DNA from: Oikopleura dioica
Lineage: Eukaryota; Animalia; Chordata
Length of the DNA stretch: 64,000 nucleotides
NCBI GenBank assembly: GCA_907165135.1
Contig: OU015570.1
Coordinates: forward strand, 1,695,929 to 1,759,928
Direction: 5' to 3'
A program made the position numbers and the translations under genes. Under the pieces are notes generated by a model. The model had not been told where the DNA came from, searched no databases, and was given only the letters and a program-made list of their open reading frames with translations. Positions 35,924 to 64,000 of the stretch are shown here, piece after piece. The stretch's first letter is position 1. Each line of letters opens with the position of its first letter.

Positions 35924-36042
35924 GGTTTCTTTTTTCTAGAATGGGTTAATTTTCTCCGTTCTTTTTGTAAATACAGTTAAATTCAAGATTTTAAATTTTC
36001 ACTACTGTAGCTCATTATTTACTTAAGGGGGTGACGCGCGAA

Positions 36043-39924: not shown

Positions 39925-40008
39925 GTTTTTAGAAGAAAAATGCAATTCTCTTGTCCTTTTTAAGACTATTTTCTCAAGATATATTAGATTTCGAATGATT
40001 TTCAAACC

Positions 40009-40280: not shown

Positions 40281-40505
40281 CCCCTCCCTGGCTTTTCAGC
40301 ACGTGATAGGCGGGTTGAACGATTGAAAACAGTGATGTCAACATGGAAAAAGGGAAAACACCAGAAATATCTTAACGGAATACGGTTTATGCACGGATGA
40401 GCACATCTGAGTTGTTCTAGCGGTTTGAAAATCATTCGAAATCTAATATATCTTGAGAAAATAGTCTTAAAAAGGACAAGAGAATTGCATTTTTCTTCTA
40501 AAAAC

Positions 40506-40787
40506 ATGGCTGACTACACCGAGACTCAGAAGAAAATCTTGTTCCGTCTGAGGCTGAGCCCTGAAAAGTGGCTGACTTCGGCGGAATTTCAAGCAGGGCT
40601 GATCGATTATAAACAAAATTCGAACGGAACTTGGAAAACTAAACGGCGCAATCTTCAGACGGCGCGCAAAATGTTCGCGAATTTTAAATTTCAACCCGAA
40701 TCGGGTGAAGTTCAAATCTCAGTTGAACAGCCAGCAGCAAAGCGGCGTCCGCGCTCGACCGTTACGGTTGTCAAACCCATGGGGTAA
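40506..40787 (+). pseudogene. Unknown ORF, possibly a Gin/Ginger-like fragment (right-arm copy)
   Basis: Mirror of 39643-39924. Confidence 0.3.
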
Positions 40788-41986
40788 AAGCTGATTCTCT
40801 AGAATTCCAGATTTTTTGTTTCAATTCTAAAATCGAATTTTCAGTCCGTAAGAACGATTGGCTGCTCTGGAAAATTGTAGAGCACTTATCACCGAAATCG
40901 AAGAGGAAATCTTTGGAAAGCGTCAGTAAAAAAAATAAGACACAAGATAAACGACAAATATACGACTGTATCACCAATTTGGACTAGAAATGAAAATAAA
41001 AAGAATGAAAATTATATCAAGTGAAATGTCATTTCCTATTGAAGTCAGCTTTGACCTTGAAAGGATTGCGGCGCAGCAGCGGTGCACAGGAGTAGTTGAC
41101 GATGGCGTTGAGCGTTTTCACGACCGTGACGCGCTTTTTGGCGAATTGACCGGTTATTGAGAGAAGCGCAGCGCTTAGTGAGCGCGCGACTAGCTGGGGT
41201 GTGCGTAATGATTCGTGACGCGCTCGGATTGGAGGCGTGAATGCTTGAGGCGTGCAGCGAGTTATTCTGGAGAAAAGTAGAAGAACGGTGTCTTGGCGCA
41301 GCGCTTGGTGAGCGCGCTAGTGGTGGAGATGTAGTCGTATCAGGCATGTAGCAACGAGTTGAAAAGTAGACGGAGTAGAGTAAGGACCAAGTGCAACGCT
41401 TGATGAGCGCGCTGGGTCGAGGCGTAGTCGATGAGGCATGACGCGATCTGGTTGGAAGTGTAGACGCGTAGAAGTGGGTTGATTCGTTCACGACGAAGCG
41501 AGTCTTCGAGACGAGAAATTTTGAATTTTTCATACAGTAGGATTTTTTGGGAGTACTTTATATCCTCCACCTTTTTCTTTTTCGTTTTTGCAGCGGGAAT
41601 AAAGCATTTTGAACAGTTGGAAGTTATTACTGAAAGGACAACAAAGGAGAAAAATCGCAATGAAAAATAAAACGAATAAACAAAACCTAAGGGACCCTCT
41701 AGGCTTAATTTTAAAATACCCTATCAGACCGCCTATCAGAACCTAGAGTCAGGGCAACTCCTGAAAGGCGTAAAACTATTAACGGGAAGTCCAATATTCC
41801 TAATTGGGCCCGCAAATCGACCTTAATTGAACTTTTTTGAAACTCGATCCCTGAAAAACCTTAAATTAACTAGATTCTTAAATGCGCTCCTTTGAAATTT
41901 ACAGTAACCTTAGGTCAATTTTCATATAAAAAGAAGCGAACAATTAAGTTCTGGCTCCTGGATAGTTTCCCGATGGCGTTTGAACA

Positions 41987-44385
41987 CTAGATTCGGCTAG
42001 TGCCTTTTCCCGCTCCTACTGAACTAAATCCTATTGGCTTAAGGCTGTTTATGTCGCGATAAAGTTGCCTATTCTTCGAAAATAGTAATGTTAATTTTCG
42101 CCTTGCGTACCAGAGAACAAGCGCAACGAGCGTAAGGGTGGAGACCCCGATAGAGAGGGCGATCAATCTTGATTCTTTTTCAACCTTCTCTTATTCTAAA
42201 TCGAATGCTGAGTGGATCTTGTATGTTTGATTAAAATCAAATCGCGGCTCATCCAACGTACTAAAGTTAAAGATATGTCGCCCAAGTGGCGCTTTGATCT
42301 CAATATTATGCTCATCAACAACCTGAGCTCGTTTAACAGAGATGATCTGTACCTGGCTTTCAGCTCTTGGACAAAGTACCTCAGCCCTGTTATGAGAACT
42401 CTCAAAAAACATAAATCCCTCGAATTGAGTTGTTAGACCCTGATTCCCGGTGCGTCCAATCTTGCTTCTATGGGTCGAAATAGCACTAGAATAGACCGCT
42501 ACTCCATTGCTCGCAACCGCAAATGAGCACGAGTCTTGCGTCTCAGTTATAATTAGGGACTTTCACGGGTAAACGATTGCCCTTCGATTTTCGTAAAAAT
42601 TTCCTCATAAGTATGAATTTTTCTGCTGATTCTGATGATACCAAAATCTTTTTTGATCGGAAAATGCTGCGGAAGACAAGCTTAAGACTACTCTTAAAGC
42701 TGACTGATTTTTCACCCGAGTTTTCTGGGTCACTTGCTTATCATTTTTCGAATATTTCTTTTAAAACATGAAGCTTAGGACTTCTGGGAACTTTTTTGTG
42801 TTAATCACCCGGTATTGTTTGCATCTGATTCCGTGTACTGGGTCAAAGCAAGCACCCACTGAGAGTATGGCGCGCGCTAATGCTTTTCGGGCTCCCCGCG
42901 CAGCGTGTAAAGCACTAGCGCGCCGTCACTTTTACTTACTTATCTGATGATTGTGGCCGACTAGTAGAACCAAGTAAATTTATTTTTTGAGAGATTAAGC
43001 AGAAGGGTCTGACAGAGAACATATCGAAAAAAAAATGACGAGCAAAGACGAGCACTATACATTTTGCATCTTTTAAAGATAAATTCTATGTTTTTCATAA
43101 CATTCAATATTTTTTTGCCAATTTTTCTGTCATATTTGGAATCAGCAGGTACGAAAACATCTAGAGACTGAAAAATCAAGAAGAATGGATGCATATTTCG
43201 GGAAGTTGGGAAAGCGAAAATGGGGCTCCCGCGCTCCCGTGATAGTCCCTAGTTATAATAACCGGGCAAGTTTCGGGATCATTCAAGCAGCTCCACAAGA
43301 GGGCGTCTGTTGGACAGAGGTGCATTTCAGAACCAATTTCTTGGCAAAGAGCTCTATCAATATCCATGACGGTACCCCTAGAAATTGTGATATAGTGACC
43401 CACTTGAGGGCGGACCAGCTGGTTTCTCAGTTGACCCGGGCGGATCATTCCGAAACTTCGAACGGAGTATCTGGGCGTGGATGAGTCGAGAATGTCGAAA
43501 AATGACATTGAAAACAAGATGTGCACGTGCCCGTCTATTATCTCAACTCCAGCTAACTGGGATCGAGTTGCCTCCGGCATGCTCCTGAGTAAGTAAGAGC
43601 AGTACGCTTGACACTCAGATTCTGGGAGAGCCGCACAAGAAACGAGACAGCTGGTTCGGTAAAGAGTTAAATACTCAACGGTTGCAGGGAGGTTCCCTTT
43701 CATAAGGGTTCCAACTTCAGATTCTAGTTGGTCAAGGTAGCTCGTGACTAAAGTAGCGATCTCCCTTGTGGCAAGTTCTCGGCGTATGTCTCGCCGGGTC
43801 TCACACAGTCTTTTTATCTATATTAGAGGCGAAATGATATAACTGGTTGAGCCTTACTTGCACTGCCTGGGCATTCTCAAGTACCATATCCCGGAGCTTT
43901 TCAATGTTATTTTGATTCCTAAGCGTGACCTCCTCGACTTTCTTAATCTTAAAACCATTGGCAGTCTCTAGAGCCGTCTTAACCAACCCAAGCACTAAAG
44001 AAGCACTGGACATTAAATCCCTGCGCATTCGGCCCTTAAATGCAGTAGCTTCCGCCAAAATTTCATTCAATCTAGTCTCGTAAGTCCCCTTAAGAGTCGC
44101 ATGAAAGAGCTTAGCAGTCTCAAAACTAGAATCCTCACATTGCTTTTGTGCCCTTCTATCATCCCCTGCGAGATGAACGCAGTGTTCCTTGGAGCAGTCG
44201 CTAAATGTTAGATTCTGATAAGCCTCTGACGGACTAGTTCGAATAACCCTGAACCGATGCACCTTCTTCTGATAAGTGAGGTACACTTTTCCGGAAGATT
44301 CAAGGAGGAGGCCCCCATCTCTAATCTCGATGTTCTGAGCAGCAGCACCGTAAATCCACCACGTGATCCATGCAAGTCGAACCAT
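41987..44385 (-). pseudogene. env: env-like fusion glycoprotein, disrupted (right-arm copy)
   Basis: Mirror of 36043-38443 with the same lesions. Confidence 0.85.
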
Positions 44386-44504
44386 TTCGCGCGTCACCCC
44401 CTTAAGTAAATAATGAGCTACAGTAGTGAAAATTTAAAATCTTGAATTTAACTGTATTTACAAAAAGAACGGAGAAAATTAACCCATTCTAGAAAAAAGA
44501 AACC

Positions 44505-47500
44505 TTATTCTAGCGCGGGCTCTGACGATGGATTATACGGGCGCAAGTGCCGTATATTTCTGACTAAAGTCTTCCCCTCACTCGTTTTGATCCTGTAAGC
44601 TCCGGCTTGTAACCTTTCTGTCACTTTCCCGCGACCTTCCCAATGGACATATAACTTCTTCGAATTACCCTCACGCTGCGGTTTCCAATAGAAAACGTGC
44701 TGGCCTTCTTTGAGCTTGATACCCTTATGTAAGGGGATCTCACTTCGAATAAACTTGTCCATTTGGCGCGCACTTAACTCCTGACCGAGATTAGAGAGCC
44801 ACCCAGTGATATATGAATACCAACTGAGTGGATCATACACCTGTATGTCTTCATTCTCTGAGGCCTTGAAGAGTGGCAGAGGAAGTAGGCGTCCCGTGAG
44901 ACATTCAGAGGGGGTAAGGCCATCTAGAGAAGAACTTGGAGAGTTATTAATAAGGAACAGTAGATACTGTAACTCATAACTCCAGTTCTCACGTGACAGC
45001 GACAAAATTTGGCTCTTAACCTTTAAATACCGCCAGCATCGTTCAATACGATTTCCTGGCGGGTGCATTGGTGAAATAAAACCTACAGAAATATTTAACT
45101 TCTGTAAAAGGGGAACAACAGCCTTAAATGACTGATCATAATCGGTGATCAACCTGGTGTTGACAATGTTCTGACTCAGAAGAAGAGAGCTCAACGCGTG
45201 TGCTACGTCCTTAGCGCTTTTCGATTTCAGAGGGCATGCGATTAGAAAATGGGTGAGCCCGTCAAAGAGCCCGCAAATGTAGCGATTCCCATTTGAATCA
45301 CAGCTCCCCATATCTGCTAAATCTAGGTAGACATATTGCCAAGGAAGAACTCCGATATTTGGCGCTGGACGATCACATGGTCTTAAGGGTGGTCTAGGCT
45401 TTCTCTGGATACAAACTGAGCAGTTAGAGCAAATGTCGACCGCTACTTTAGTGATGTTACGCGTTCGAAAATATCGCGAAAACATCGAGGCAAGAGCCTT
45501 GCTCCCCGGATGTTCCATTTTCTGATGGAGAAAAGACGCAACAGAATGGGCAATGTCCTCAGGAAGAAGTAATAATGGCTTAATGACGTAATCCTGGCTG
45601 TAAAACAGTCCATTCTCGTGCTTGAAAGCCGCTCTCCTGGCAACCTCATTGGCGACGAACGCGTCATTATCTTGCGCCTTCTTTAGCATCTCGACCGAGT
45701 ACGGTAATCCATCGACAATGAACATTGTATCATCCGACTCGACGGCCTTATTTGAACGCAAATTGTACCTTTTACACTGCAAAATAGAGCAGACTTGCGT
45801 TTGTGGACCGAGTGTGGCTTCGAGGGAGTGACAGACGGCGAGATCATCTGATTCATCAAAGTCAGAGAAAGTCGCTACAGGGAAACTACGCGAGAGCGCA
45901 TCAATTGCAACTATCCCTGGGTGATCATTTCTCTCGTGTTTGATGGCGCGGACGTCAAAGCGAGTGATCCTGGCAAAGAGATTCAGGACCCTTACGGGTA
46001 GATTCTCCTTGAGCCGCTTCTGCTCTAAAACACCAACGAGAGAGGCGTGATTGGTGATACAGTACACCATACGCGCAAAAGTGTAGCTCTCGAAGAATTC
46101 TAGTGACGCCACTAGAGCCAAAAACTCCTTATATCTACTGCTTAACCTCTGCTCACCCGGTACAAGTCGCCTTGAGTAAAACCCTAATGGAACAAGAATG
46201 CCATCTTTCTGTCTTTGGTGCAAAGCCCCGGCAATGCCCAGGTCAGAAGCGTCAGTTATCAAGACCAGATCAAGTGAATCATCAACATGGACAAGTTCTA
46301 CCGCTTTCTTGAGTATCTCCTTTGCTTTCTCAAACGCCTCCTGATGAACAACCCTCCACTGAAATTTCTCCGCCGTATTCGAGCACATCTTATGCAAGGG
46401 ATTAAGAGTCATCATGATGTTGGGCAAATGCTTTGAGTAAAAAACGCAAAGGCCGCAAAAGCGTCGAACTTCTCGTCGCGATTTCGGTGCCGGAAACTGT
46501 ATGATCGAGTCAAGCTTGCTTTTTATTGGCCGCAAACCCCTACGTGAAATCACGTACCCGAGGTACTCGAATTCCTCGTACAGCAAATTCGCGTTTTCGC
46601 GGGAGCCAGAGTGATACCCACAGAGATTAGCCGCGTGAAAATCTCCTTCAGAGCGTGCATGTGCTCCTGGTAGCTGTGACTAAGAACAATGATGTCGTCA
46701 ATTAGACAAAACACGTTCTCGATCCCATTGAGCACGTTTCGCATCAGAAGCGAAAACAAAGAAGGTGCATTGGCGAGCCCGAACAGTACCCTCTTTGCCG
46801 TGTATTGGTCCGGGCCGAAAGAGAAAGCAACTTTCTTCCTAGAATCCTTGGTGAGAAGAAGCTGCGAATAAGCCGAACTGATATCTGTGACAGACATGTA
46901 AATGTTCCCTTCCGATTTGCTTATTATACCAGAGATTTGGTTAAGCATGGTTTCCATGGAAGGTAACGGCCAGCGTTCTGTAAGCGTCTCCTTATTTGTC
47001 AAACGGGCGTCCAGAATTGGGCGGCAGCGACCATTCTTTTTTCTTATAAAGAAAAGTGGACTATTATTTGGGGACACGCCTTTCTGTATCACATCCATTC
47101 GACACCACTTCCGAAGCATCTGAGACCCTTCCTCCCTCAACGCGAATTTCGGTTTGATGGGCTTAGAGTACACAACTTTCGTCTCATCTTTCCATCGGAT
47201 GGAATAAGCATACTGGTTGATAATGCCGATGTCCTCATCAGAAGTGGAGAACACAACACGATGGACACCCATAAGATCGCGAAATCCTTCAGACTCCGTC
47301 TTATCAAGCCACGCCCCTATCTCGACCTCATTATAGACTTCAGACGCTGATGGGTTAAACCGCTTTTTACGAAGCTCGGCAGCCGCACGTGCTTCCAATT
47401 CTAGATCTGGGTGCTCTTGGATAGCAACAAGCTCATTAGACTCAAATCCATTTTTAGTAGGCTCAAGCCAGTGTCCGTCAGCAATTTTTGCCGCCTCTGG

Positions 47501-48127
47501 AACCTCGACTTCGAAAGGATTATTGTTAACAAGCATCACGTTGACCTCCTTGGAAGCATCGACGATGCTCTCGACCAGCTCGATATCATTTTCGGGCAAA
47601 AATCCAGAAGACGACCGCTCTACCACTACTATTCCTTGAGCTCTAGAATCAAGTGAGCACTTTCCAGCCACGACCAAAGACTCAAACGGAGCTAGAACCA
47701 CTCTCTCAATAAGATTGACCTCAACGTGACCACCTTTCTGTACTAGCGGAACTACCTCACCGTCCAAAATAGCAACTTTTCTCTCGTTATCAATTTCAAA
47801 ATGACCGAAAGCAGTCGCCGGAAGAACAATGTCATAATTATGATTGGCAACTACCACTTCAACTCTGAAAACTCGTGTTCCTATGACTAAAGATACAGTA
47901 GTTTCGCCGCTAATCTTAAGATAATCGCCAGAAGCCGCTCGAACAGCCACTTTTGACGGAGTAAGGTACAGTGACAATTTGTTAGCAACAGAACGTGAAA
48001 GCATGATCAAGTTACAACCGCTGTCGAGAAGAGCAGTTAACGAAGAATCTTTTAATTTGCACTGAATCTGAGGAAGAAGTTCAGGAGTGCTCAAAAGATG
48101 GATTTCAGGTGCCGGGGGCTTTCCTGG
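44505..48127 (-). pseudogene. pol: Ty3/gypsy pol: protease-RT-RNase H-integrase with one frameshift near 46550-46586
   Basis: LLDSGC protease, RT LIDD, RNase H TDAS, HHCC and DDE integrase; PR-RT-RH-IN order defines Ty3/gypsy. Confidence 0.96.
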
Positions 48128-48608
48128 TCATTGTTGAAGATGGCACTGTTGTGGTCAATGTCTAGGTGGTCCTCCAGATGACTCTAATGAACACTCGGTA
48201 CAGAAGGGAGCAGTCACTTTCGCGTTCTTATTACGCTGCTTGTTTTGCCCCTTCTGACCACCTTGAGATCCGCTGGAACCCTGGCTCTGCGATCCGTGCG
48301 AAATATTTGCTTGTCCAATCTTCAGCTGCTCTAGAATCGAGTTAAAGCCCGTCTTCATTTCCGACTGAATATCGGAAACACTTGTTTCGAGTTTCGAAAC
48401 TCGTCCCTCGAGCCCTGCTAAGCTCTGAAGCTTTGGGCAAGAAGCCAAAAAATGAGGTCCCTTACAGTAATGACAGGTTATTCTGCCATTCATAGCACAG
48501 AGATCAAAATCAGATTCCTGTCTCTCGGCCTCTAAAACGTTGCAGTTCTGATTGCGCGATTTCGCCACTTGGCGCATGATCTGGAGATTAGCACTCAAAT
48601 CTATAGTA

Positions 48609-50823
48609 CAGTGGTGTGAGGAGTTTCCGCACCCTTTGTGAGTGCTGCGTTCCCGCACCCCTAGCCCGCACTTTTTCGCTAGATGAGGGTCACGTCGCGC
48701 CGGCTATTTCGCCAAATCTAGAAGAATGAAGCCCTTTTAAGGGCTAAAATTTTCATGCTTTCATCAATCTTCAAAATTTAAAATGAAAACCACACCCGGT
48801 AGAATTACCGATTCTGTCAAAGAGAAAATTTTTCGGACAAACAAGAAGCTGACACTTCATCAGAAAAAAGCCGTGGTAGAAATTCATCACAAAAATAAAA
48901 GTTTAGGCTATAAACGGCTGATAAAACTTCTTCATGAGAAGCTAGATTTTACTATATCCGTTTCTACTCTTAGAGGTATTTTAAAAAATAAAGATAAACT
49001 TGAATGCACTACCACTTCCACCAGAACAACTCGAGTCAATTATTTTTCAAAATCAATGAACCGGTTTCGTCAAACAGTTGTGGACACAATCATTGCAGAA
49101 AGCCATTATATTGCTGTTAGCAATATAAATATACAGGAATATTGCTTCATCATTCAAAAATATCCTGAATTTAGAGAAGATAAAGCAATAAAAAAATTGA
49201 CTTTCAACACGCACTGGATCCTTTCATTGAAAAAAGACTACGAAATAACACATCGAAAAATCACAGGCAAAAAGTACTTAGTAAAACAAGACGCTGTCGA
49301 TAAATGTAGAAAGCAGCTGAAGGAATCTTTGTCTAGTTTTGAAGAGTCTGATAGGTGGAATATGGATGAGACCCGTTTCAATTTCTGGCAGGCGAACGGT
49401 AAAGGAAACTATATAAAATCCTTCGATACCGCGATGACCCATCGATTCGATGAAAGGGACGCTTATAGTGCGGGCTCATTCATTTCTTCCTCCGGTCAGA
49501 CAATCTTCCCCTTTTTCATCGCTTCTTCTTTCCCTAGAAATCTCTTTGGTAAATCCATTAAATCAAAAAAAATTGAGTATACGAATTCTCGAGGAGAAAA
49601 AATGAGCGATGAAGTAAGGTATTTCAAAGTCAAAAAAGATGAAGAAGTTCAAGAGTGTCTTTTCTTTCGATCAAGAAAGGGTTACATGACCAGACCTTTA
49701 TTTTGTGAGCTTATGCGGATATTCAACAAGTGGAATCAAGACCGATCTCGAAAAGCTGCACTTGTACTGGATAACTGTCCTGCTCATTGCAATGTTGAGG
49801 AGAGCCTTGGCCTTGATTCTGTGAAGCTTTTTTACTTGATTCCAAATGCTACCGCGTGGTGCCAGCCCGCAGGTTTTTATGTTGAACGTGAAAAGTTCAT
49901 AAATTTACTTTGGAAACAAAAACTTTAGACCTTTCTCTATTTCCTATGGAAGCCAAAAATTAAAATTTAGATCAAAATATCTTCAATATTGCTAAAAGGG
50001 AATACAGAAGCTGGTTGACGAGACAAAAATCTCCATTTCTATCTGGCTTTGCACAGCCAAAACCTCCAGAAAGAAAAGAATGCGTCTTGAAATTCGCCAC
50101 TCTGCTTGGCTTCTTTCCGAAAAATTACGTTGTTAAATGTTGGGAACAGGCTGGACTTCGGGAGAAAGTGGAGGCCAGTCCTGACGATCAGCAAATTATC
50201 AACGAGTTGGAAGGTAATTTTGTTCTTTAAAATCATTTAAAAACCTAAATTAAATTTTAGCCGCGAAGGAATTTGGAGAAGCACCGTTGGAGGGAGGGAT
50301 TCTCGATCAAAATCGTATTGATCCTCCGCCATTGCTCGATTTTGATGAAAATTTTCAAGCAATTGATGTCCCGCTGCTTCCCGTCCCTCCAGCGGTCGCC
50401 GAGAAATCCGACGATACCAGAAATCGACCGAGCTCCTCATCCGAAAGCTTCCGTTCCAGCGACTCGTCCGAGAAATCGCCCAACCTTTCCGATCGTCCTC
50501 CTACTTTTTCTTCTTCTACGACTGTTCAAAAAAAGAAGAAACAACTGTCCATCCTTCAATTTTTGGATAAAAATAAATATTAACAAAAATTTAACTCAAA
50601 AATCCGTCGCATGACTTTTAAATTGCAGGAAATTTAATATTTTTACAAGCTTTGAATCAACAATTCTCTCAAAAAATAGCAAGGGCAACATTAATTTTCT
50701 AGATGAAAGAGGCGCGACGTGACAAAATCTCTCGGTAGAGATAAATTCTCTGTCTGGAGTGATTGCTGCGTTTCCGCACCTTTTACCCGCACTTTAGGGG
50801 TGCGGAAACCGCTCACACCACTG
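48609..50823 (+). mobile_element. Full-length pogo/Tigger-family DNA transposon
   Basis: 26-bp TIRs CAGTGGTGTGAG(GA/CG)GTTTCCGCACCC at 48609-48634 and 50798-50823; TA duplication at 48607 and 50824. Confidence 0.95.
48783..50583 (+). CDS. pogo-family DD33D transposase, three exons (48783-49872, 49971-50213, 50261-50583), 551 aa
   Basis: N-terminal HTH-like region; [15 protein letters not shown] and WCQPA-D; GT-AG introns of 98 and 47 nt give a continuous frame of 1656 nt. Confidence 0.88.
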
Positions 50824-52273
50824 TACTGTCTCGAGAAAGCCACAGTGTCTCCCACATGGCGTAAGCGCTGGCGGTCAGAATTTTGGAGACGCCCTCCTCG
50901 AGCAATGATCTCCTATTCTCAACCGGAATCTCGTTATAGTTCAAGCCCGATAAGATCTTCAGTAACCAACGAAATGCAACTACAAGGTCCTCATTTGGTC
51001 GGAGTCGGAAAGATCTGAAGTCAGCCCGGCTGTCATTATACAACTCACACTGGTCTATTAGTTTTCGACAGATTGCTCTAAAAGTGTCGCTGGTTTTTAT
51101 CCCTACCTCCAGGCGCAGTTCCGCGGAAAGCTTCGTAAAAACTACATCCGCGCAAGAACTATCTGACCACCCAAATCTCTGAGCGTGCTCTTGGATGTCC
51201 AAGATGAGAAGCTCAATACGCCGAGATTCAAGGCTGGTCAGCCGCTGAATGTTAGCGGCTTGTTTTATGAGCCGAGTTGGATCGAGCCGCACCGCGGCTC
51301 TTTCCGAAAAATTCTCGGAGTGCCACCCTTGATCCCGAGTCTGAAAACGAGGTGTACTCGGAAGATTGTCAGAAGGAGATCGGCGATCAGAAAAACGATC
51401 TTGTGCATTCACTTTACGTGTTTGCTGGTTAGAACTCGAAAATTGAGATTCATTTGGCCGCGCAGAGGCAAAACCAGCGAATTCATTTGCATTTGATTGG
51501 GGGGTTTCTTGTTGATTGCCAATTCTAGCGCTCATTGCTGGCGGCGCTGGAACTGTACCTGTTGGCCTCGGATGCGATTGGTCAAACCCATCACGGTTAG
51601 ACCCGGATTCCGAAACTCTTGTAACGGGCGTTTCAGTAATACTCCTAGGCTCAGCATAAATGCTTTCTATCTCCGGGAAATTTCTCACACCCCGGGGGTT
51701 AATGAGAAATTCGCCACTTTCTTCATCTCGCCTCCATACATGCTCCTCTGCGTAATCTTTCAGAGCCTGTAGATTATCCTCATCAGAAGCTCCTTCCGGA
51801 ATCTCCTTTGCTACCAAACAAGCTATCACTTGCCGAGGAGTAAGTTCTGATAGCTTCAAAAATAAAGACTCCCTTATTGGTAGGGGGTGCACAGTAGGAA
51901 AATAACCAAAATCGAAAGTATTTTCAATAGGCTTGAATTTTTTTAAGTAAGTAGAACACCTTCCGTGGATCATTTTAATAAAAAATGGCAAATTATCCCA
52001 AAATTTTTGGTTTTTTCGGATTTTTTCAAAACGGGGTTCAACGGGGGACTAGATAAAACCAGATTTGGATAGAGCAGCTCAAGAGCTTTCAAATCATACC
52101 CAAATCTCATTGTGCACTTTTGTGCAAAAAATTCTTGAGCCGATTTTCTGTCGAAACCCTGCAATTTTCGGCCGAGTGGGGTGTTCGAATCCCGACGATG
52201 CTATTTTTTTTTCATGACCGTTTTCCACTCTAAATGATAAGAACTGATCATGTGATCCAGCGTTAGTCATATA

Positions 52274-53039
52274 CCGTGGTTTTCCATTTTAAGAGCGCCC
52301 AATTTAAGAGCGTTTTCGCCAACATTTTGCAAATTATGTTATCTGCGAAAATTCAAATTTAAGAGCGTTTTTGAAGATTTTTATGCAATCAAAAAATTTT
52401 TAGACTCAAATAAATCATTAACTAAAACGTGTAATCTCTGACTGCTTTTCCGGCCATTTTAAAGTCAATGGTTTGGTAGTGTCGGCTCCTTCTGTCATTT
52501 GAACTTGAGGTTCTTCTCCAATCTCCATCGTCGACGGACCATCAGGGTCGGAGCTCTTTTGCTTTTAATCTGATTCCTAGATATTTAATTTACCTATTCC
52601 TACAAAGGCTAGAAAATGTACCCTGAGGCATGTCTTCCCCATCATTTTCCTTCGGATTATCTATTAGATCTCCATGACAGTCTTTCTCCCATCCTTTCTT
52701 TTTGAGCCTTCACCAGAATCTGCGCATATTTTTTCTTCTAAGCCAAAGACATGTGTTTTTCTTTTCTTCTCCAGGCATTTTCGTTGTTTAAATTTTGAAG
52801 AATGAAAGAGATCAGATTAAGAAAAAGCGCTCGAGCAAAATCCTGAAAAAATCACTCACGTTCTCATCTTGATATACAATTACTTTTGCTTCTAGATCTT
52901 TTCTGTTTCATACTTTCGAAATTCCCTGAAAAATGAAAATAACCACTGTCATCCTATATCGATAGAAAAATTTCCAATTTAAGAGCGTTTTAGGCAAACC
53001 CTGTCATCTAAAAAACGCTCTTAAAATGGAAAACCACGG
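52274..53039 (-). mobile_element. Internally deleted pogo/Tc1-type element
   Basis: Perfect TIR CCGTGGTTTTCCATTTTAAGAGCG with TA at 52272 and 53040; decayed HTH-like KRKHMSLA*KKKYAQILVKAQ on the minus strand. Confidence 0.8.
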
Positions 53040-53249
53040 TATTGTCCTCCTGAGGACTTTGCTGGTGGAAGAATGCTCCTGGAAGAAGAAAAAAATTATT
53101 ATAATTTTAAAAAATAAGGAAAGTTCGGGAACAGTTAGGGGAGGGGCCAAGCCGACCAGAAGGGGAAGCAAGCCCCGTTTTATCAATTCAGTCAAGGACA
53201 GGGTAAAGCTGACCCGAAGGGGAGGCCACGCTCGTCTATTCAATTCAGT

Positions 53250-53352
53250 AAGCCCCGTTCCTTGATTTTTAATTTTAAGGGGCTTGACAGAGGCCTGGGA
53301 CTCTTAGTTGATCAATCTCAGTTACGTCCCCAACCCCACCCACGCCCGTTGA
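53250..53352 (+). repeat. Dispersed copy of the hairpin element related to the 56-bp satellite
   Basis: AGCCCCGTTCCTTGATTTTTAATTTTAAGGGGCTTGAC...CCCCAACCCCACCCACGCCC; relatives at 7923-7970, 8483-8585, 24790-24872 and 57050-57092. Confidence 0.8.
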
Positions 53353-56724: not shown

Positions 56725-57209
56725 TATTGATAGTTCGACCAATAAGAACACATTTTTGGCGTAGAGAAACGGGAGGCCCTTGACTAACATACTGTATTTA
56801 TTACAGTCAGTTTTTTGCCTTTTTTGTGTGGCGCGCAGCGCGCGGCGCCGAGTTCGCCCTCAGGCACTTATTAGGATGGTCGCCGCGGAATTCAATTGAA
56901 ATTCTTTCTTTTAAAAGAAATATCAAAAAATGAGCAATTAATTAAATTTAAAATTATAAAATTAATCTTTAAATGAGTAAATAAAACAATTTTTTTAAAT
57001 TCTCTATATTTTTCAGAAAATATTAGAATATTTTTTTCTTCTTCTTTTTCCGAAGGGCCGTCTCAGCCCCCTTCCTTGATTTTTTATTTTAACCCCTATA
57101 CGGGAGGTGTACAATTTTTGTCGATTTCGGGATATAATCGCCAGCGATAAATTGCTCCTGCAGAAACTCAACACCCTCAATACTCTTACACGTGTAAGCG
57201 TTCTAACGT

Positions 57210-57500
57210 TTATTCTAGTACAGCAGTTAGGCTCAACAAAACAAACACGGGTTCTACAGCGTCTCCAGCGGTGATGATGGAGGCCCGAGAAGGATACACG
57301 TGATGGAAGTTGATGTTGGAAGCTGCGTCTCCACGTTCACTGAACAAACCTGAAATCCGATTAGTCTGCTGTAGCTCCACTAGAATCTCTAAATAAACGT
57401 GCTTCACCTCGAGTTCGAACGCTAAGCGTATGAGCAACGGTTGGTGCGAACTCAGCCGACCGTTCTCGCGCGTAGGTTTTCTTCCTAAGGGCAGGCGAGC
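57210..57500 (-). CDS. Small hypothetical protein (5' end uncertain)
   Basis: Open frame GRKPTRENGRLSSHQPLLIRLAFELEVKH...VLE*, directly downstream of the RGG-tail gene. Confidence 0.35.
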   Translation of the reverse strand, partial: ARLPLGRKPTRENGRLSSHQPLLIRLAFELEVKHVYLEILVELQQTNRISGLFSERGDAASNINFHHVYPSRASIITAGDAVEPVFVLLSLTAVLE

Positions 57501-57577
57501 CTGGCCGAACTATTATTCTATCGTCTAAATCCTAACGTCCCCCCTATTTGACCGAAGTAAACCTACCGGACCTACAT

Positions 57578-58875
57578 TTAATATCTTCCCCGTCGAGCGC
57601 CGCGGCCGTTGAATGATCCTCGTTTTGGCGCGAAACCGTGATAGTTTCCTCGTGCTGGAGCCGGTCTTTTATATGCTCCTTCGCCGCTGAATCCTCCAGA
57701 TGCTGAGCTCCACGAGCGTCCACCCGTGTACACTTTCCAGTGCTGGGCCCATGCTGGCAGGGGAATCCTTTCAACCACGTGACGGTTTTCCTCGATGCTG
57801 AAGGATGTTTCTAGGCAGCGCAAGCTTCCATTGGGGCCGACTATCACGAGTTGACAAGGCCGAAGGTGGTCCATCCCGAGCACGTGACAAAGCCTGGCCT
57901 TTTCTCCCCACTTCGAGCAATACTCGATCAACGTCTCCAGCGTCCAATTCTTCATTTCCTCCACCGATTGGATGAAGTCCAGGCCCGCAGCTTGACTTTT
58001 GATTGCCAGCTCCGACGTGGTTTCGACCCATCCCCGGAGCTCGTCCTTTGACGCCTTTTCTCCCGGCTTTGGTGAGAGCTGATAGCATTGTTAAATCGAT
58101 GGGAACCCCGCCGGGTTTTTATCGAGTATCGCAACGTGAATCAATACCCGTTTATTTCACTTACCCAGTTGGGGCTAAGGGCGCTAAAGAGACCCTGGAG
58201 ATTGACCACGTTCGCCTTGATCAAATCGTCAGCCACAACTTCACTTGCCATATTCCAGAATCTTGATTTTAACTCCTCAGTGCTGTCGCACTCGTAGAGC
58301 TTCATTCTAAATCCCGACGACTTCGGGAAAAAGAGATCGTTCACCGTCACGAGGTAAGAATAGTAGCCCCCAACAAGCCGAGGCGCGTTTATAAATTGAT
58401 CTACTAGGTCTTGCGACCCCTTCAGCTGCAGCAACACGAATGGAAGCGTCGACGTTCGCGTGTTCTTCTGAACTCTACCGGTAAGTTTCTTTTAATACAC
58501 GTGTAAACAGACCTGTTCTTCAACCGTGAAAATCTTTCGCTCCGCCTTCGCAATCTTATCACATAAGATGCGGAGAGCCGACATAAACTTTTTCACTTCC
58601 GGATCGTTTTCGTTCGTTTTCACGTCCTCGATCTTCGCGAACGTGCTGACAAACTGCGCCACGGGTACGCCGCCCTTGAGTTCGTTTCTTGCACGTGTAG
58701 ATTCTTCCGACAACTTGACGTCGCGGGCTAGATCTAACTGGCCCGAAGTCATCCGGCGCTTATCATCCGTCTTGAACATGCTTGTGGTTTCTGGTGGTTG
58801 GTAACCATCATCTAGGTCACGGAAGGACGGGCCAGCCGTTTCCATTTCCATAGGGGTAGACTTTTTAGGGGGCAT
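57578..58875 (-). CDS. Hypothetical 388-aa protein with an RG/RGG-rich tail; exons 58875-58513, 58467-58165 and 58078-57578
   Basis: Two phase-0 GT-AG introns (45 and 86 nt) join three ORFs without stops; the protein ends RGSFNGRGARRGRY. Confidence 0.75.
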
Positions 58876-58961
58876 TCAGTCTAAACCAGAATACAATTAA
58901 CAATTTTATCTCGTCTAATCGATTAGCTTGGGACACGGAAATTTAGTTAAACACGTGTTGA

Positions 58962-60745
58962 ATGCCCCGTCCGGCGAGAAAGGTTACTCCTCGTTGATTT
59001 CGTCGTTGTCTCCATTCTGGGAGCCTAAACAAACTTTTTACTTTTGAATTTTTGGTCTTTTCCGAAGATATTTTCCAGAGAGTTGACCGGTATCGAGGCC
59101 TACTTCAACAATCTTGCCCGCCGCCGCGAACTACATCCGGACCGCCCACGTGATCTCCTCTACAAGTACGAGTTCGATGCCCGTAGCGTGTTTCCTCAAC
59201 GTGGGACTCGCCGAGCCTACCGAGACGAAAACGTTGCGAATTCTACCCAGCGTATCACTTCACTTCGTGTCCTCTCTGACGTGCTCGGAGTCGATGTTAC
59301 TCCTGCTCTACTCCGAACCGGTCGAATCCCAATTCGCGTGAGATTTGAAATCGACGGCCACCGTGAGGATCTTCGAGCTGAACTTCACCTTCCACGACTT
59401 GTTGACTTCCAGGTCAACGTCTACACTCTCTACTGCGAATATCAGTCCGCAGTTAACCGAATTTCTGACGACCGAGGCCGTCTCACCCGTGATCACCGAG
59501 CTATCGCGTGTCGCCGCTTCTTGGTGCACCTTCTGCGCTACACCACCTTCCGAATCCACGATGCCGCCGAGCTCTACCACAAAATCAACCGGCCGCTTCC
59601 CCACGAGATTGGCGATCCATCTGTAGGCTACTTTCACTACAGTCTCGACCACGCCCCGCCATACTTTGTCTTTTGCTCTGGTCCGTCGCTCTGCACGGAG
59701 TAAGTAATTTATTCTAAATTGCTTTGCGTTTACACTTGCCTTTCCTAACTCGATATTCTAGCGAGTACTCTACGCACGCCGGTGGGGCTTTACACCGCAA
59801 AATGGGCGCCCACATTCACTCGTGTTCAACAGATCATCTCTCCGCAATCCTGCCAGCCCAGAGTCCAACATTATCAGGTGTATTACCTCGGTCTTCGGGC
59901 GAGATGTTTTCAACAACAGCGAGCACGGATACCGCGGCAGCCTCGGGGACGACAACAGTAAAGGTGACGCGAGAAGTTGCTTTTCCACGTGCTAAAATTT
60001 ACTAGTCATTGTTCGACTCAACTTCAATGATCTCCCGCGCTTCTTCACTGATCACAACCTTTCGATGATTATGTTCCTCGCTCTCTATCTCTTCCAGTGT
60101 ACCGAAAAGCACTCCTTTGTCGGCCAAGTAAGATTATTACCTGTTTTCTCAGCAGTCTTCTGCTGCTCAGCTCCAGAAATTATGGATTCGTTCCCTGTGT
60201 CTGACGCGCCTTTTTTAGGATGAAGCGGCAATCATCTTTGCGGGCGGATTTTGTTACTAAGGTTCCGTTTTTGCCACCCCACGTGTGCTCGTGAAATCTG
60301 GTGGCCTCCGACTCTTTTACGAGTTCTGCAGCAAAGGCGGTATCCACTTTCCCGACTACATCAAGAAGCGAACAAACCGCGGCACCGAACTCTATTTCCC
60401 ACGTGACATCTTCGCTCACGCCCGTAAGATTACAAATGAGTTATATTTATTCACGTGCCTTATTCTTAGCTTTATTCTCCGCTATACTAAATACAAATTC
60501 TAGGTGAGCACAGGGTGATTCCGAAAGGGTCACTAGAACTCTACCTCGGGGTCGACCTTGTCCAGAAAATTATGGATACGGATACCATGGAACTTCCGGT
60601 GCTCCCAATTCCTCACGCGCCTCGGTTTGAGACGGTTGATGACGATTTCATCTGGCCCAACGACGCGAAGATCCGTGAGCAACAAGCCGCCCGCGGCTTG
60701 CCCACTCCTCTCGGCGGATACGGTCATCTCCGCTACTCCGCTTGA
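58962..60745 (+). CDS. Hypothetical multi-exon protein (about 6 exons), possibly disrupted
   Basis: Phase-compatible GT-AG introns at 59964-60005, 60128-60218 and 60424-60503. The first exon and the junction at ~59698-59761 are uncertain. There is an in-frame TAA at 60258. Confidence 0.55.
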
Positions 60746-61035
60746 TCCTTTCCTGAAATCAACGACGATTCAGCCAGGGGGCCCACTTCCGCGTGGCCCA
60801 AATTTCCCGTGTATATTTTTCTCCGTTTCTTTGGCTGCGAGAAAGCAAACTCTTCCAGCCAACCTAAACAATTTTGCCCTACTAATCTGTTTACTTTCTC
60901 ACCTTCATGTTTCGCTTTCCGTTTCGCCGTATTTTCGGCCATCATTTTAAAATTTTCCGTTATCGCTCGCGCCAAATCCGCGTCAGTTTTTGCTCCATTT
61001 CGAAACTTATCATAACACGAGTCAACTTTTCCCAT
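60733..61035 (-). CDS. Small hypothetical protein with a PKKRRK NLS-like motif
   Basis: ATG follows CTTTAG-AA; optional in-frame 39-nt intron; the stop overlaps the end of the convergent gene. Confidence 0.5.
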   Translation of the reverse strand: MGKVDSCYDKFRNGAKTDADLARAITENFKMMAENTAKRKAKHEGEKVNRLVGQNCLGWLEEFAFSQPKKRRKIYTGNLGHAEVGPLAESSLISGKDQAE

Positions 61036-61119
61036 TTCTAAAGCGACCAAATAAATGTCTTTTCTTAACCTGTCTCAATTATTCAGCACGTGAGTTGATA
61101 CAGTTAGATTGCCACGTGG

Positions 61120-61744
61120 CTAAGCTCTTCGAGGGGTGGTGGAGTCCATCTCGATGTCAGCGACGTTCGACTGTTGTGCAAAGCGGCGGAAGCGAACTGC
61201 TTCTTCGGTTTGATCGGCCACGCCGTTGTTGACATCCCTAGCTCTAAGTGGCCTAGCGTCGCACGTGATTCCCCGAATGCTGACCATCGACTGCATCAAT
61301 AAACCCGGGAAATTGCACGGGTCCACGTCCAGCACGTTGGCCACCCCGACCACGTTGTGAACCATGTGGTCGAATTCGCGAATCATGGCATTGTGCCCTT
61401 TGCTTTGCGCATCCACCACTTAATCACTAATGAAAGGATGGTACGGCAGCTCAAGCCTTACCTTCAATCAAATCGCTCAGCTCAGCGCGAACTCTCGCGA
61501 TCATCGCCTCAGCTGGGTTGACCAGCGCAGACGTTACTGGCAGAAACACTGCAGTGTCGATCTTCAGCCCACAATCCGGGCAAGCAGCGCAATCCTTCGC
61601 GCAGTTCACACACACGTGATTATCACACGAGTGGACGATGCACCGTCGCCGACAGAAATCCATCTCACGAGTGCAAATAGAGCACGCTCCTAGCACCGAT
61701 CTTGGAAAGTTGTCCAAGAACATGCGAATTCCATGGGGATCCAT
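61120..61744 (-). CDS. RING-finger-like protein, 193 aa from ATG 61744; exons 61744-61462 and 61418-61120; a short upstream exon at 61888-61859 is possible
   Basis: C-x2-C-x15-C-x2-H-x-C-x2-C-x6-C-x2-C; 43-nt phase-1 GT-AG intron. Confidence 0.75.
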
Positions 61745-62031
61745 TTCCTTCTAAAATCACAACTTCATTAACTCCTCTCGAAATCAGAGGACGATACACG
61801 TGAGCACAAAAGGGTACAAAATAAATATAGCACGTGCACAAATATAAACTAGTGAAACTTCTGGCTTCGCTTCTCTTTCGGTCCGCATAATTTTCTCTCA
61901 CGAATCTTCATGGATCTGCAATTTGACCCTTGTTTCAAACTGTTTGCTTAACCCACCGGTTGTCGCTCGATCATTGGTCCTTGCTGTCTTCGACCCGCGC
62001 GCCTGATTACGCATCACACCTGGCTGGTCAA

Positions 62032-63142
62032 ATGTTCACGAGTCGAAAAGAGAAGAGAACCTGGGATGCCTCGGAAACCCTGCCCGAGTCCGCTCCCCAT
62101 CGCGAAAGTAAAATTCCACGTGACTCCGACGAAGCTCGCCCGTCTGCCAAAAATGAATTTCTCGTGCCAAATCCCGTCGACACTCCCGGAGGTCATACTG
62201 TTTCCGCTGCAAACGTATCGTCTACACCCGTGAAACATCTTCCTGCTGCATCCGACGTGGATTTTGATGCGAGTCGGATCCCTCTTTCCGACAATTTAGT
62301 ATCCGCTATGTCCCTCGATCACACGGAGTTTACCTCGGAGAAAACCATCTCCGAACACGAGACAAAAGTCCCTGCGAGCGATGACACTATGACATCTCAA
62401 GACAAAACCACCATTCTTATGAACACGATCGATCACCTGATCGACAAGAATGCCAGTCGGCTCTCTGTCAAGAGCGAGCCTGACGCTCCAGTTCCTATGG
62501 AGCTGCCGATTCTGCCCACTTTTGTGCCACGTGACCATCTATACACTCGCTGGTATTTAGCAATTTAATTCAAGCCTCCTTTAACTTACTGACCTTTTAG
62601 TTACTCTCTCCAAAATTTACCGCCGAACTTGTTTCCTGAGTTCGAAATCGACGTGTTAAAGTACTATTCACGTGGCCCACTTCTTGTACACCACGTGTTC
62701 GTCGATCTACGCCAGCAAGCTGGTCTTCAGCACCGAATTCTCCAGCATCCATTCTCACGTGTCAAACAATTTTTATTACATATAGGTACGGCTTTGTTTC
62801 GACGCACACGACTCATATTATAGGTCGGACACTTCATTACTCACGAGTGGCTCCTCCATGCAAATTCGAACTTTCCTTTCCTCCGACCGTGGAAATTGCT
62901 GCCAAAGGTTTCACCCCGCATTTGCTCGTGATCTTCGTGGTTTACTCACGTGTTATCTCACCTCACTTAGTGAATACTATCGCGGAAGTTGTTTTATCCA
63001 GCCTCGCACGGAAACTCAGAAGCGGCGCCTCACCGAGCTCGCGCATTCATTGTGCGACAACTTTTTCGCTCAGAATTTCGGACACGATTATCGGCCTCCA
63101 TTTCTCGTCGAATATGACTCGAATCGTCGACCTAGAGAGTAA
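62032..63142 (+). CDS. Hypothetical multi-exon protein with a Ser/Pro/Thr-rich N-terminus (3' structure uncertain)
   Basis: A 48-nt phase-2 intron at 62553-62600 links ORF 61930-62568 to the frame of ORF 62629-62823; later frames are ambiguous. Confidence 0.5.
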
Positions 63143-63944
63143 CCAGCCATTACCCAGTATCGTCCTTAAAACCTCACGTGAACGCAAACGAAACAACTTC
63201 ACTCTACCACGATTTTCTTGCACTCTACCACTCATCTTTCTGATCTTTGCCGTTCTTTTCTTCATCCTCGTCGCTTACGCCGTTTCCTTCTTCCGCGAAA
63301 AGCTCACAGCCCTCGCACACTACGTCCAGTACTTTCACACGTTTAGCCCGGTAATGCCTTGCAGAAAACCGCATTAATATAATATAATTTCTAGCTTCCC
63401 AAAACTCATCGACGCCGACGTCAAATTGGTTTCGACGAGCTCATGTCCGTCAGTGCTGCCGCCTATGACCCCGAGCCTGTTCCTGAGAACTCCCCCGCCA
63501 CCACCACCATGCGTTTTGGTGGTGCAAGCCCTTGGGAATGGTAAGATCAATTATCCCTCAACCATCATGACGTATTCAAGGGTCACTTTCGGGGTCGCTT
63601 CTCTGTTTTTCTTCTCGTGTCTCCTCTGCGCCTGCGGCCATCAAATAACAGCTGTCCTGAGACAATGCACGTGGAGCCTTCCGAATCCTGGATCCAGTCA
63701 CGACGATGGTGAATTCTCCGAAGTAATCGCTCTTCGACGACAAATAGCCGCAGACAAGCAAATGATCAAAGCGCGCAAGGCTCACTCAAAAGTCACGAAG
63801 AAACTTCGCGCTCTCGGCCCCGCTGACGCTGAAATTCCATCCGTCGTCCCGGCGACCGACGCTCACATTCCTACACGTGCTTCTTCTCGAAACGCAGAGC
63901 CACTCCTCCACGTCGCTGACCAAGAAAACTCCTGCTGGGCTTAA
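63114..63944 (+). CDS. Hypothetical two-TM membrane protein with a furin-like site; exons 63114-63350, 63395-63540 and 63581-63944
   Basis: GT-AG introns of 44 and 40 nt keep the frame open; TM1 LPLIFLIFAVLFFILVAYAVSFF, then HRRRRQ, then TM2 WVTFGVASLFFFSCLLCAC. Confidence 0.6.
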
Positions 63945-64000
63945 ATCTCCCTTTCTTTTGTCAACAAATTTCGCAAATTATTCATCGAATTATGATAGAA

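What the first reader, a model, noticed from the sequence alone, without database searches (positions are those of the whole stretch)
57189..63879. CACGTG (E-box) is roughly 20-fold denser in the island than in the rest of the window
Seen: I count at least 27 CACGTG in 6.7 kb, at 57189, 57297, 57776, 57881, 58498, 58692, 58952, 59147, 59986, 60280, 60400, 60452, 61087, 61113, 61262, 61613, 61797, 61831, 62117, 62528, 62669, 62692, 62756, 62947, 63175, 63668 and 63874. I count only about 11 in the preceding 57 kb, and chance expectation for the island is about 2. Sites occur in exons, introns and intergenic DNA alike. Several extend into longer palindromes (CTTACACGTGTAAG, AACACGTGTT, GCCACGTGGC). 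Known: CACGTG is bound by bHLH-ZIP factors such as Myc/Max and USF. Inference: the whole element may be coated with a selected binding signal for expression, replication, packaging or silencing.
Basis: partly seen in the sequence, partly recalled or inferred. Interest (0 to 1): 0.82.

Follow-up and report, generated by a model that had tools for sequence, protein, structure and literature searches.

The report
Dense CACGTG coat on gene island
A 7-kb cluster of unknown, intron-bearing genes at the end of the window carries the palindrome CACGTG about once every 250 bases in exons, introns and spacers alike, far beyond what base or codon composition explains; what reads this signal is unknown, and nothing shows that the cluster is a virus or a mobile element.

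Summary
The count is exact: 27 CACGTG lie in 57189-63879 and 11 in the preceding 57 kb. CACGTG is the commonest hexamer of the island. Local dinucleotide shuffles give 1.6 +/- 1.3 (maximum 8 of 2000). The excess survives codon-preserving shuffles: 18 sites in 5.0 kb of exons against 4.3 +/- 1.6. It is stronger still outside exons: 9 sites in 1.9 kb against 0.26 expected. No other E-box or ACGT-core hexamer is enriched. The flanks are unrelated, there is no periodicity, and longer palindromes occur at chance rate. The island is unique DNA of about 50% GC that starts at 57093, directly after a host-type repeat, and runs off the window. It holds at least four compact genes on both strands. Nine canonical, frame-preserving introns of 38-86 nt support them. 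No gene has a relative, domain or fold match. No transposon or virus hallmark was found. The flanking retroelement's closest named relative is from Oikopleura dioica, so the host is probably an appendicularian tunicate. My best reading, at low confidence, is an exact-hexamer mark kept by selection over a whole gene cluster and read by a dimeric E-box protein. I could not test whether ordinary genes of this genome share the density.

The parts
57093..64000 (.). Island: unique DNA of about 50% GC, dense in CACGTG, cut by the end of the window
   Evidence: GC is 0.49-0.50 against 0.20-0.46 elsewhere. No repeat is shared with the rest of the window to the right of 57092. There are 27 CACGTG against 1.6 expected.
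57189..63879 (.). Array of 27 exact CACGTG sites (57189, 57297, 57776, 57881, 58498, 58692, 58952, 59147, 59986, 60280, 60400, 60452, 61087, 61113, 61262, 61613, 61797, 61831, 62117, 62528, 62669, 62692, 62756, 62947, 63175, 63668, 63874)
   Evidence: The flanks are unrelated, so this is not a repeat family. Every 500-bp bin holds at least one site, with no periodicity. Twelve of the 18 exon sites sit in the frame xCA-CGT-Gxx.
57050..57092 (+). Solo unit of a host dispersed repeat and satellite, forming the left edge of the island
   Evidence: It matches the 56-bp satellite at 22428-24802 and solo units at 8481-8517 and 53251-53278.
57578..58875 (-). Gene g1: 3 exons, introns 58468-58512 (45 nt) and 58079-58164 (86 nt), Arg/Gly-rich C-terminal tail, no known domain
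   Evidence: The reading frames are open and the GT-AG introns preserve the frame. There is no Pfam hit and no metagenome relative. It holds 4 CACGTG, one of them in the 45-nt intron.
58876..58961 (.). Divergent spacer between g1 and the g2 region, with one CACGTG (58952)
   Evidence: The g1 ATG is at 58875 on the minus strand and the first plus-strand ATG is at 58962.
58962..60745 (+). g2 region: one or two plus-strand genes. Exon pieces are 59079-59699, 59762-60002, 60261-60423 and 60504-60742. Introns are 59700-59761 (62 nt) and 60424-60503 (80 nt). The model is unresolved for 60003-60260.
   Evidence: The 204-aa exon has no relative among 1.84 billion representatives, none in the word search and no Pfam hit. 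Its AF2 core (residues 55-155) has pLDDT 70-90 but no fold match in the PDB or the viral library.
61120..61744 (-). Gene g3: 2 exons, intron 61419-61461 (43 nt); exon 1 is a Cys-rich RING-like zinc finger
   Evidence: The only matches are weak: zf-RING_5 at E=0.9 and the Roquin-1 RING at E=0.01.
60733..61035 (-). ORF g3b, about 100 aa, just downstream of g3 (operon-like spacing). Its 3' end overlaps the 3' end of the g2 region.
   Evidence: There is no Pfam hit. The gap between g3 and g3b holds two CACGTG (61087, 61113).
61745..62031 (.). Divergent spacer between g3 and g4, with two CACGTG (61797, 61831)
62032..63944 (+). Gene g4: 5 exons, about 580 codons, with hydrophobic membrane-like segments. 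Introns are 62553-62600 (48 nt), 62786-62823 (38), 63351-63394 (44) and 63541-63580 (40).
   Evidence: All four introns are GT-AG and preserve the frame. There is no Pfam or PDB hit. It holds 9 CACGTG, all in exons.

Best explanation
The island is a compact cluster of lineage-specific, spliced genes lying in transposon- and satellite-rich DNA of an appendicularian-type animal genome. The exact palindrome CACGTG is kept at about 4 per kb over the whole cluster as a DNA-level mark. The mark is most simply read by a dimeric class-B E-box protein: the Max network (Myc, Mnt or Mga with Max), USF or TFE/MITF. Many weak-to-moderate sites spread evenly would let such a protein occupy the whole domain. 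That could switch the cluster on, or hold it silent, as one unit against its repeat-rich surroundings. What is shown: the excess, its exactness, its independence from coding and its even spread. What is inferred: selection, a protein reader, and control at the level of the domain.
For: There are 27 sites against 1.6 +/- 1.3 in local dinucleotide shuffles. In exons there are 18 sites against 4.3 +/- 1.6 after synonymous-codon shuffling and 1.65 after codon permutation. No shuffle of 2000 reaches 18, so both codon choice and residue order accommodate the word. Outside exons there are 9 sites in 1887 nt against 0.26 expected, including sites inside 45- and 80-nt introns and in both divergent spacers. 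Only the full palindrome is enriched. The 29 other ACGT cores match their expectation of about 30, no other CANNTG is enriched, and one-off variants are only about 1.7-fold up. This pattern fits cooperative reading of both half-sites by a dimer. Sites are spread evenly, with at least one in every 500-bp bin and a variance/mean ratio of 0.40. Their flanks are unrelated, so they arose independently and not by copying. From established knowledge, CACGTG is the class-B E-box, and MGA/MAX in PRC1.6 uses it to silence germline genes in mammals.
Against: There is no flank preference of the kind real bHLH-ZIP factors show. There is no concentration at promoters. Exon density equals spacer density, which is unusual for transcription-factor sites. 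No reader protein, occupancy or expression data exist. Only one island is seen, and it is cut by the end of the window. The genome-wide background is unknown. The island also differs in GC and in strand composition, so a compositional or historical cause is possible.
Confidence: 0.35

Rival explanations
1. The density is a genome-wide or compartment-wide word bias. Ordinary genes of this species, or of this chromosome, would all carry CACGTG at this density. The contrast in the window would then only reflect genes beside repeats.
For: The other 57 kb holds no clear host gene, only satellites, retroelements, a pogo-like ORF and MITE-like units. There is therefore no genic control inside the window. 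The resident retroelement shows a mild excess, 4 against 0.7 expected, P=0.006. Island intron sizes and gene spacing are host-like: the O. dioica intron peak is 47 bp, most intergenic spaces are under 1 kb, and operons are common (PMC5240408).
Against: A CAGE-based motif study of O. dioica promoters reports TCTAGA, TATA and a TFAP4-type E-box. The strings 'ACGT', 'Myc' and 'bHLH' do not occur in its text (PMC6389100). Only one unrelated paper in the library holds both 'Oikopleura' and 'CACGTG'. All island genes are orphans, unlike an ordinary gene-rich stretch.
Confidence: 0.2
2. The island is foreign or formerly episomal DNA: horizontal transfer from another eukaryote, an endogenised large DNA virus or giant transposon, or an assembly chimera. 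The word excess would be the donor's genome signature or a replication or packaging signal.
For: There is a sharp jump in GC. A strand asymmetry runs across the region: third codon positions make the + strand C-rich whichever strand the gene is on. All genes are orphans with overlapping 3' ends and spacers of about 90-290 bp. The island shares no repeat with the rest of the window.
Against: No viral or transposon domain was found in any exon. The one confident model has no match in the viral structure library. There is no terminal repeat at the left edge and no second copy. Nine canonical short introns are of host size, and they carry the motif at least as densely as exons, so the word was kept or made after the introns existed. 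The island directly abuts a host dispersed repeat with no gap.
Confidence: 0.15
3. The excess is made by mutation or repair, without a reader, as proposed for the highly iterated palindrome HIP1 of cyanobacteria. A site-specific DNA methyltransferase or mismatch-repair activity would convert near-cognate words into CACGTG within this region.
For: Recognition is of an exact 6-bp palindrome with no flank preference, as for restriction-modification-type enzymes and unlike most transcription factors. Density is equal in coding and non-coding DNA.
Against: The expected precursor and deamination neighbours are not depleted: CATGTG plus CACATG number 1 against 2.4 expected, which has no statistical power. 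No such process is known in animals. It would have to be confined to 7 kb, since the flanking 57 kb is at expectation.
Confidence: 0.12
4. The signal acts at RNA level. Because the word is a palindrome, it reads the same in transcripts of either strand. It could be a site in pre-mRNA for an RNA-binding protein or for pairing between transcripts.
For: Sites lie in exons and introns of genes on both strands. Five sites read CACGTGAG, which resembles a splice donor.
Against: Five sites lie in spacers or the left flank, where transcription is unproven. No RNA family matches the island. No known factor reads this word in RNA.
Confidence: 0.05

Closest known systems
Class-B E-box sites of bHLH-ZIP factors (Myc/Mnt/Mga-Max, USF, TFE/MITF) and homotypic clusters of binding sites
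   Same: The core is the exact CACGTG, a palindrome suited to a dimer. Sites are present in both divergent promoter spacers, and many sites lie in one locus.
   Different: Known clusters sit in promoters or enhancers of a few hundred bases and show flank preferences. Here the sites cover 7 kb or more evenly, exons included, with no flank preference.
PRC1.6 (MGA/MAX/E2F6) silencing of germline genes through E-boxes in mammals
   Same: It uses CACGTG as a recruiting word for a chromatin state over lineage-restricted genes.
   Different: Known targets carry one or a few promoter sites. No E2F6-type partner motif, expression pattern or factor was tested here. The comparison rests on my own knowledge, not on a tool result.
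HIP1, the highly iterated octamer palindrome of cyanobacteria
   Same: It is a short exact palindrome, hyperabundant at about one per few hundred bases, in genes and spacers alike, with unrelated flanks.
   Different: HIP1 is genome-wide and bacterial. Here the word is confined to one island of an animal-type genome with introns, and the flanking 57 kb is at expectation.
Domain-wide recruitment words: X-chromosome dosage-compensation motifs of C. elegans and Drosophila, and the upstream motif of nematode piRNA clusters
   Same: A short word at raised density defines a chromosomal domain rather than a single promoter.
   Different: Those words are longer (8-21 bp), oriented or degenerate, enriched a few-fold over megabases, and mostly non-coding. 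Here a 6-bp palindrome is enriched 17-35-fold over kilobases and includes codons.

Membership tests
bHLH-ZIP E-box binding-site cluster | Exact CACGTG core, far above chance | tested here: met
   27 against 1.6 expected, and the only enriched CANNTG word.
bHLH-ZIP E-box binding-site cluster | Flank preference typical of a given factor | tested here: not met
   At position -1 the counts are A15, T17, C12, G10 of 54 half-sites, close to base composition. TACACGTG occurs 8 times, a weak hint only.
bHLH-ZIP E-box binding-site cluster | Concentration in promoters or enhancers rather than coding DNA | tested here: not met
   3.6/kb in exons against 4.8/kb outside, and an even spread.
bHLH-ZIP E-box binding-site cluster | Occupancy by a cognate factor of the host | not testable with these tools
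   No host proteome or binding data could be reached. No bHLH domain is encoded in the island.
Highly iterated palindrome (HIP1 type) | Short exact palindrome, hyperabundant in coding and non-coding DNA, with unrelated flanks | tested here: met
Highly iterated palindrome (HIP1 type) | Genome-wide distribution | tested here: not met
   Outside the island the observed counts equal expectation, except for a mild excess in the retroelement. The whole genome was not available.
Highly iterated palindrome (HIP1 type) | Cognate DNA methyltransferase or modified site | not testable with these tools
   No modification data exist, and no methyltransferase domain is encoded in the island.
Transposon or virus-like element | Hallmark genes (transposase, integrase, reverse transcriptase, polymerase, capsid, packaging ATPase) | tested here: not met
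   No exon piece reaches a Pfam family threshold. The exon searched with HMMER has no relative. There is no viral fold match. Only 7 kb is visible.
Transposon or virus-like element | Terminal repeats, target duplication, further copies | tested here: inconclusive
   There is no repeat at the left edge or inside the island and no copy elsewhere in the window. No copy was found in metagenome contigs. The right end lies outside the window.
Domain-wide recruitment motif (dosage-compensation or piRNA-cluster type) | Raised motif density across a chromosomal domain | tested here: met
   About 20-fold denser than the flanking DNA, with an even spread.
Domain-wide recruitment motif (dosage-compensation or piRNA-cluster type) | Associated chromatin state, small RNAs or sex linkage | not testable with these tools
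   No expression, small-RNA or coverage data are available.

The most novel reading that the evidence does not exclude
An animal genome keeps an exact 6-bp palindrome as a 'barcode' over a whole cluster of young, lineage-specific genes. It is held by selection even inside codons and 40-80-nt introns. A single E-box complex can then occupy the whole domain and switch or shield it within transposon-rich, possibly sex-chromosome, chromatin. This would be a eukaryotic counterpart of iterated palindromes and domain-recruitment words, at much higher density and specificity than any described.
Probability: 0.2. Interest if true: 0.8.

Novelty: new variant of a known kind. Interest (0 to 1): 0.6.

Why it matters
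If the mark is specific to the cluster and conserved, a short transcription-factor word can be selected across coding sequence to define a chromatin domain. That constraint would shape codon and even residue choice in young genes. It would also give a simple sequence handle for finding similar domains in compact genomes. If instead every gene of this species carries the word, it is a striking, undescribed genome signature that needs a mutational or repair explanation. Either way the finding is cheap to settle with the full assembly.

Tried and rejected
1. Composition artefact: rejected by local dinucleotide shuffles and an order-2 Markov model. GC-rich controls in the window agree: the 56-bp satellite has 0 sites and the retroelement 0.7/kb.
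2. Codon-usage artefact: rejected by three codon-level shuffles run exon by exon.
3. Repeat family carrying the word: rejected, because the flanks are unrelated and the island has no internal repeats.
4. Longer palindromes or hairpins: at chance rate.
5. Nucleosome-like or other periodic spacing: none; the best Rayleigh R is 0.42 against a null mean of 0.45.
6. Protein identification found nothing useful.
   - Pfam on every exon piece.
   - Word search and HMMER against 1.84 billion representatives for the 204-aa exon.
   - Back-translated scan of metagenome contigs for g1 exon 3.
   - PDB sequence search.
   - AF2 with fold searches against the PDB and viral libraries.
   - The only outcome is a weak RING-like signal in g3.
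7. Paralogy among island genes or with the rest of the window: none.
8. RNA genes: none.
9. Exact 27-mer of the island in metagenome contigs: none.
10. Exact look-ups of two window ORFs: not on record.
11. Host background DNA through the pogo-like ORF: only contigs of 2.6 kb or less holding the transposon itself.
12. Literature: no report of CACGTG enrichment in Oikopleura or of a comparable iterated word in animals.


Full report
OBSERVATION

The pattern search returns 38 CACGTG in the window. Eight of those 11 are four sites seen twice in the two arms of a large inverted repeat. Density is 3.9/kb in the island against 0.19/kb elsewhere.

The island stands out in GC: 0.49-0.50 against 0.20-0.46. 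CpG is not depleted anywhere in the window.

IS IT MORE THAN CHANCE?

CACGTG is the most frequent hexamer in 57051-64000.
- 2000 dinucleotide-preserving shuffles of the island alone give 1.6 +/- 1.3, with a maximum of 8.
- The order-2 Markov expectation is 3.4.
- Orders 3 and 4 rise to 12 and 22, but only because CACGT and ACGTG consist mostly of the motif itself.

Among the 64 palindromic hexamers, the 16 CANNTG and the 16 NACGTN words, only CACGTG is enriched. The 29 ACGT cores outside full sites match their expectation of about 30. One-off variants are up about 1.7-fold overall, mainly CACGAG/CTCGTG at 16 against 3.9.

The flanks of the 27 sites are unrelated, with no base preference beyond a slight A/T excess. 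The sites are therefore independent and not copies of a repeat. Extension into longer palindromes is at chance rate: 6 of 27 against 6.75 expected. There is no periodic spacing. Every 500-bp bin holds at least one site, and the variance/mean ratio is 0.40.

WHAT THE ISLAND IS

The island's interior shares no repeat with the rest of the window. Unique sequence starts at 57093. It directly follows a solo unit (57050-57092) of a repeat that also forms the 56-bp satellite at 22428-24802 and occurs at 8481-8517 and 53251-53278.

Stop-to-stop frames and a splice-compatibility scan give nine canonical GT-AG introns of 38-86 nt, each of which keeps the reading frame. They define these genes:
- g1 (minus strand, 57578-58875, 3 exons).
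- A g2 region (plus strand, 58962-60745, unresolved between 60003 and 60260).
- g3 (minus strand, 61120-61744), with a small downstream ORF, g3b (60733-61035).
- g4 (plus strand, 62032-63944, 5 exons, about 580 codons).

Pooled codon positions show the usual excess of G at position 1 over position 2, 0.32 against 0.18. Genes are about 1.3-1.9 kb apart, with divergent spacers of about 90 and 290 bp and overlapping 3' ends.

The exons were never joined. Every search, fold and shuffle was done exon by exon, by reference, and codons split by an intron were left out. Because of that, full-length relatives longer than 1.75 times an exon could have escaped the word search. The HMMER search has no such length limit.

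GENE CONTENT

No exon piece reaches any Pfam threshold.

The largest exon (204 aa) was tested most fully.
- The word search finds no relative.
- HMMER against 1.84 billion representatives finds none.
- Its single-sequence AF2 model has a confident core (residues 55-155, pLDDT 70-90).
- That core matches nothing in the PDB (best E 0.47) or in the viral structure library (best E 0.05).

The other pieces gave as little.
- g1 exon 3 has no relative in metagenome contigs, and its model is poor.
- g3 exon 1 is weakly RING-like: Roquin-1 RING at E=0.01, zf-RING_5 at E=0.9.
- The genes are not paralogues of one another or of anything else in the window.
- No RNA gene is present.

Nothing marks the island as a transposon or a virus.

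HOST

The rest of the window is satellites, two arms of a Ty3/gypsy-like retroelement, a second gag/protease-like stretch, a pogo-like ORF and MITE-like units.

The retroelement's RNase H-integrase frame has its best named relative in Oikopleura dioica (54% identity, E=1.7e-134). Other named or unnamed hits are at about 25%. O. dioica has an intron-length peak at 47 bp, mostly sub-kilobase intergenic spaces and operons. [quoted passage not shown]

The island's gene architecture fits that picture, and the surroundings would fit a Y-like region. I take the host for an appendicularian tunicate, not necessarily O. dioica itself. The contig is not human.

CODING VERSUS NON-CODING

In 5028 nt of exon pieces there are 18 sites. 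Three codon-level controls give far fewer:
- Synonymous shuffling within each exon: 4.3 +/- 1.6.
- Resampling from the pooled codon usage: 2.7.
- Permuting codon order: 1.65.
None of 2000 runs reaches 18 in any scheme. One search gave the same result with an earlier model.

Twelve of the 18 sites sit in the frame xCA-CGT-Gxx, but all three frames are used. Outside the exon pieces (1887 nt, GC 0.42) there are 9 sites against 0.26 expected, about 35-fold. These include sites inside the 45-nt and 80-nt introns and in both divergent spacers.

The word is therefore a property of the DNA, not of the proteins. It was kept or created after the introns existed.

OTHER PECULIARITIES OF THE ISLAND

The + strand is C-rich across the whole island. 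At third codon positions, plus-strand genes have C well above G, while minus-strand genes have G at or above C. The asymmetry therefore follows the region and not the direction of transcription.

INTERPRETATION

The facts are: a strict full-palindrome requirement, independence from coding, an even spread, and presence in both promoter spacers. They fit best a mark read on both half-sites by a dimer. The known readers of CACGTG are bHLH-ZIP proteins, and this step rests on established knowledge and was not tested here. A domain-wide coat could activate the cluster or, as with MGA/MAX in PRC1.6 on mammalian germline genes, hold it silent.

Against this reading, there is no flank preference and no concentration at promoters. 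I give it 0.35.

The rivals are:
- A genome- or compartment-wide word bias (0.20). It is untestable here because the window has no other genic DNA. It is weakened by the absence of any such report for O. dioica promoters.
- Foreign or formerly episomal DNA, or a chimera, carrying a donor signature (0.15). The GC jump, the strand asymmetry and the orphan genes favour it. The host-sized introns carrying the motif, the host repeat at the edge and the lack of any hallmark gene count against it.
- A repair- or modification-driven iterated palindrome of the HIP1 kind (0.12).
- An RNA-level signal (0.05).

COMPARISON AND NOVELTY

The core is a textbook E-box. The distribution is closer to cyanobacterial HIP1 or to domain-recruitment words than to any described E-box cluster. 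I file it under none of these as a member. For the E-box cluster, flank preference and promoter concentration were tested and not met. For HIP1, genome-wide spread was not met within the window. I rate it a new variant of a known kind, with interest 0.6. That score depends on a genome-wide scan that is easy to run.

Noticed in passing
window 32553-40008 and 40422-47874: A very large, almost perfect inverted repeat: arms of about 7.4 kb, 99-100% identical in four gapless blocks, with a 413-nt spacer. Each arm carries a Ty3/gypsy-like retroelement. It is either a real young palindrome, as on sex chromosomes, or a fold-back assembly artefact. In both arms the RNase H-integrase frame is open for 693 codons. 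It lies in a different, overlapping frame from protease-RT, so there is one frame change, which may be the natural arrangement. The protease-RT frame is open for 514 codons in the right arm. In the left arm it is interrupted by one frameshift and cut short at the arm's outer end.
   Followed up: partly
window 1479-5096 and 5097-5596: A 63-bp AT-rich satellite of about 56 copies runs straight into the window's only gap (500 N).
   Followed up: no
window 22428-24802; solo units at 8481-8517, 53251-53278, 57050-57092: A 56-bp satellite (43 copies, 97% matches) with a GC-rich core. Single units are scattered in the window, and one forms the left edge of the island.
   Followed up: partly
window 52271-53042: A MITE-like unit bounded by perfect 27-nt terminal inverted repeats, with related short repeats inside.
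   Followed up: no
window 48783-49928; loci L001-L006: A pogo-like DDE_1 transposase ORF (381 aa). Its closest relatives (49% identity) lie on short JGI metagenome contigs from several samples, so kin of this host's transposons occur in environmental data.
   Followed up: partly
window 14725-16583: A second retroelement-like stretch: ORFs with a CCCH zinc finger and a gag-type aspartyl protease domain.
   Followed up: no
window 57093-64000: A region-wide strand asymmetry: the + strand is C- and T-rich. At third codon positions this holds for genes on both strands, so it follows the region and not transcription.
   Followed up: partly
window 57093-64000: CACGAG/CTCGTG occurs 16 times against 3.9 expected, often as CACGAGT. 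It is either a decayed form of the main word or a second signal.
   Followed up: partly
window 32500-38000 (and its mirror 42700-48700): The retroelement arm carries 4 CACGTG against 0.7 expected (P=0.006). This is a mild excess in a resident host sequence outside the island.
   Followed up: partly
window 59700-59761, 60424-60503, 62553-62600: Several of the short introns carry a branch-point-like CTAAC, CTGAC or TACTAA word 10-20 nt before the acceptor.
   Followed up: no
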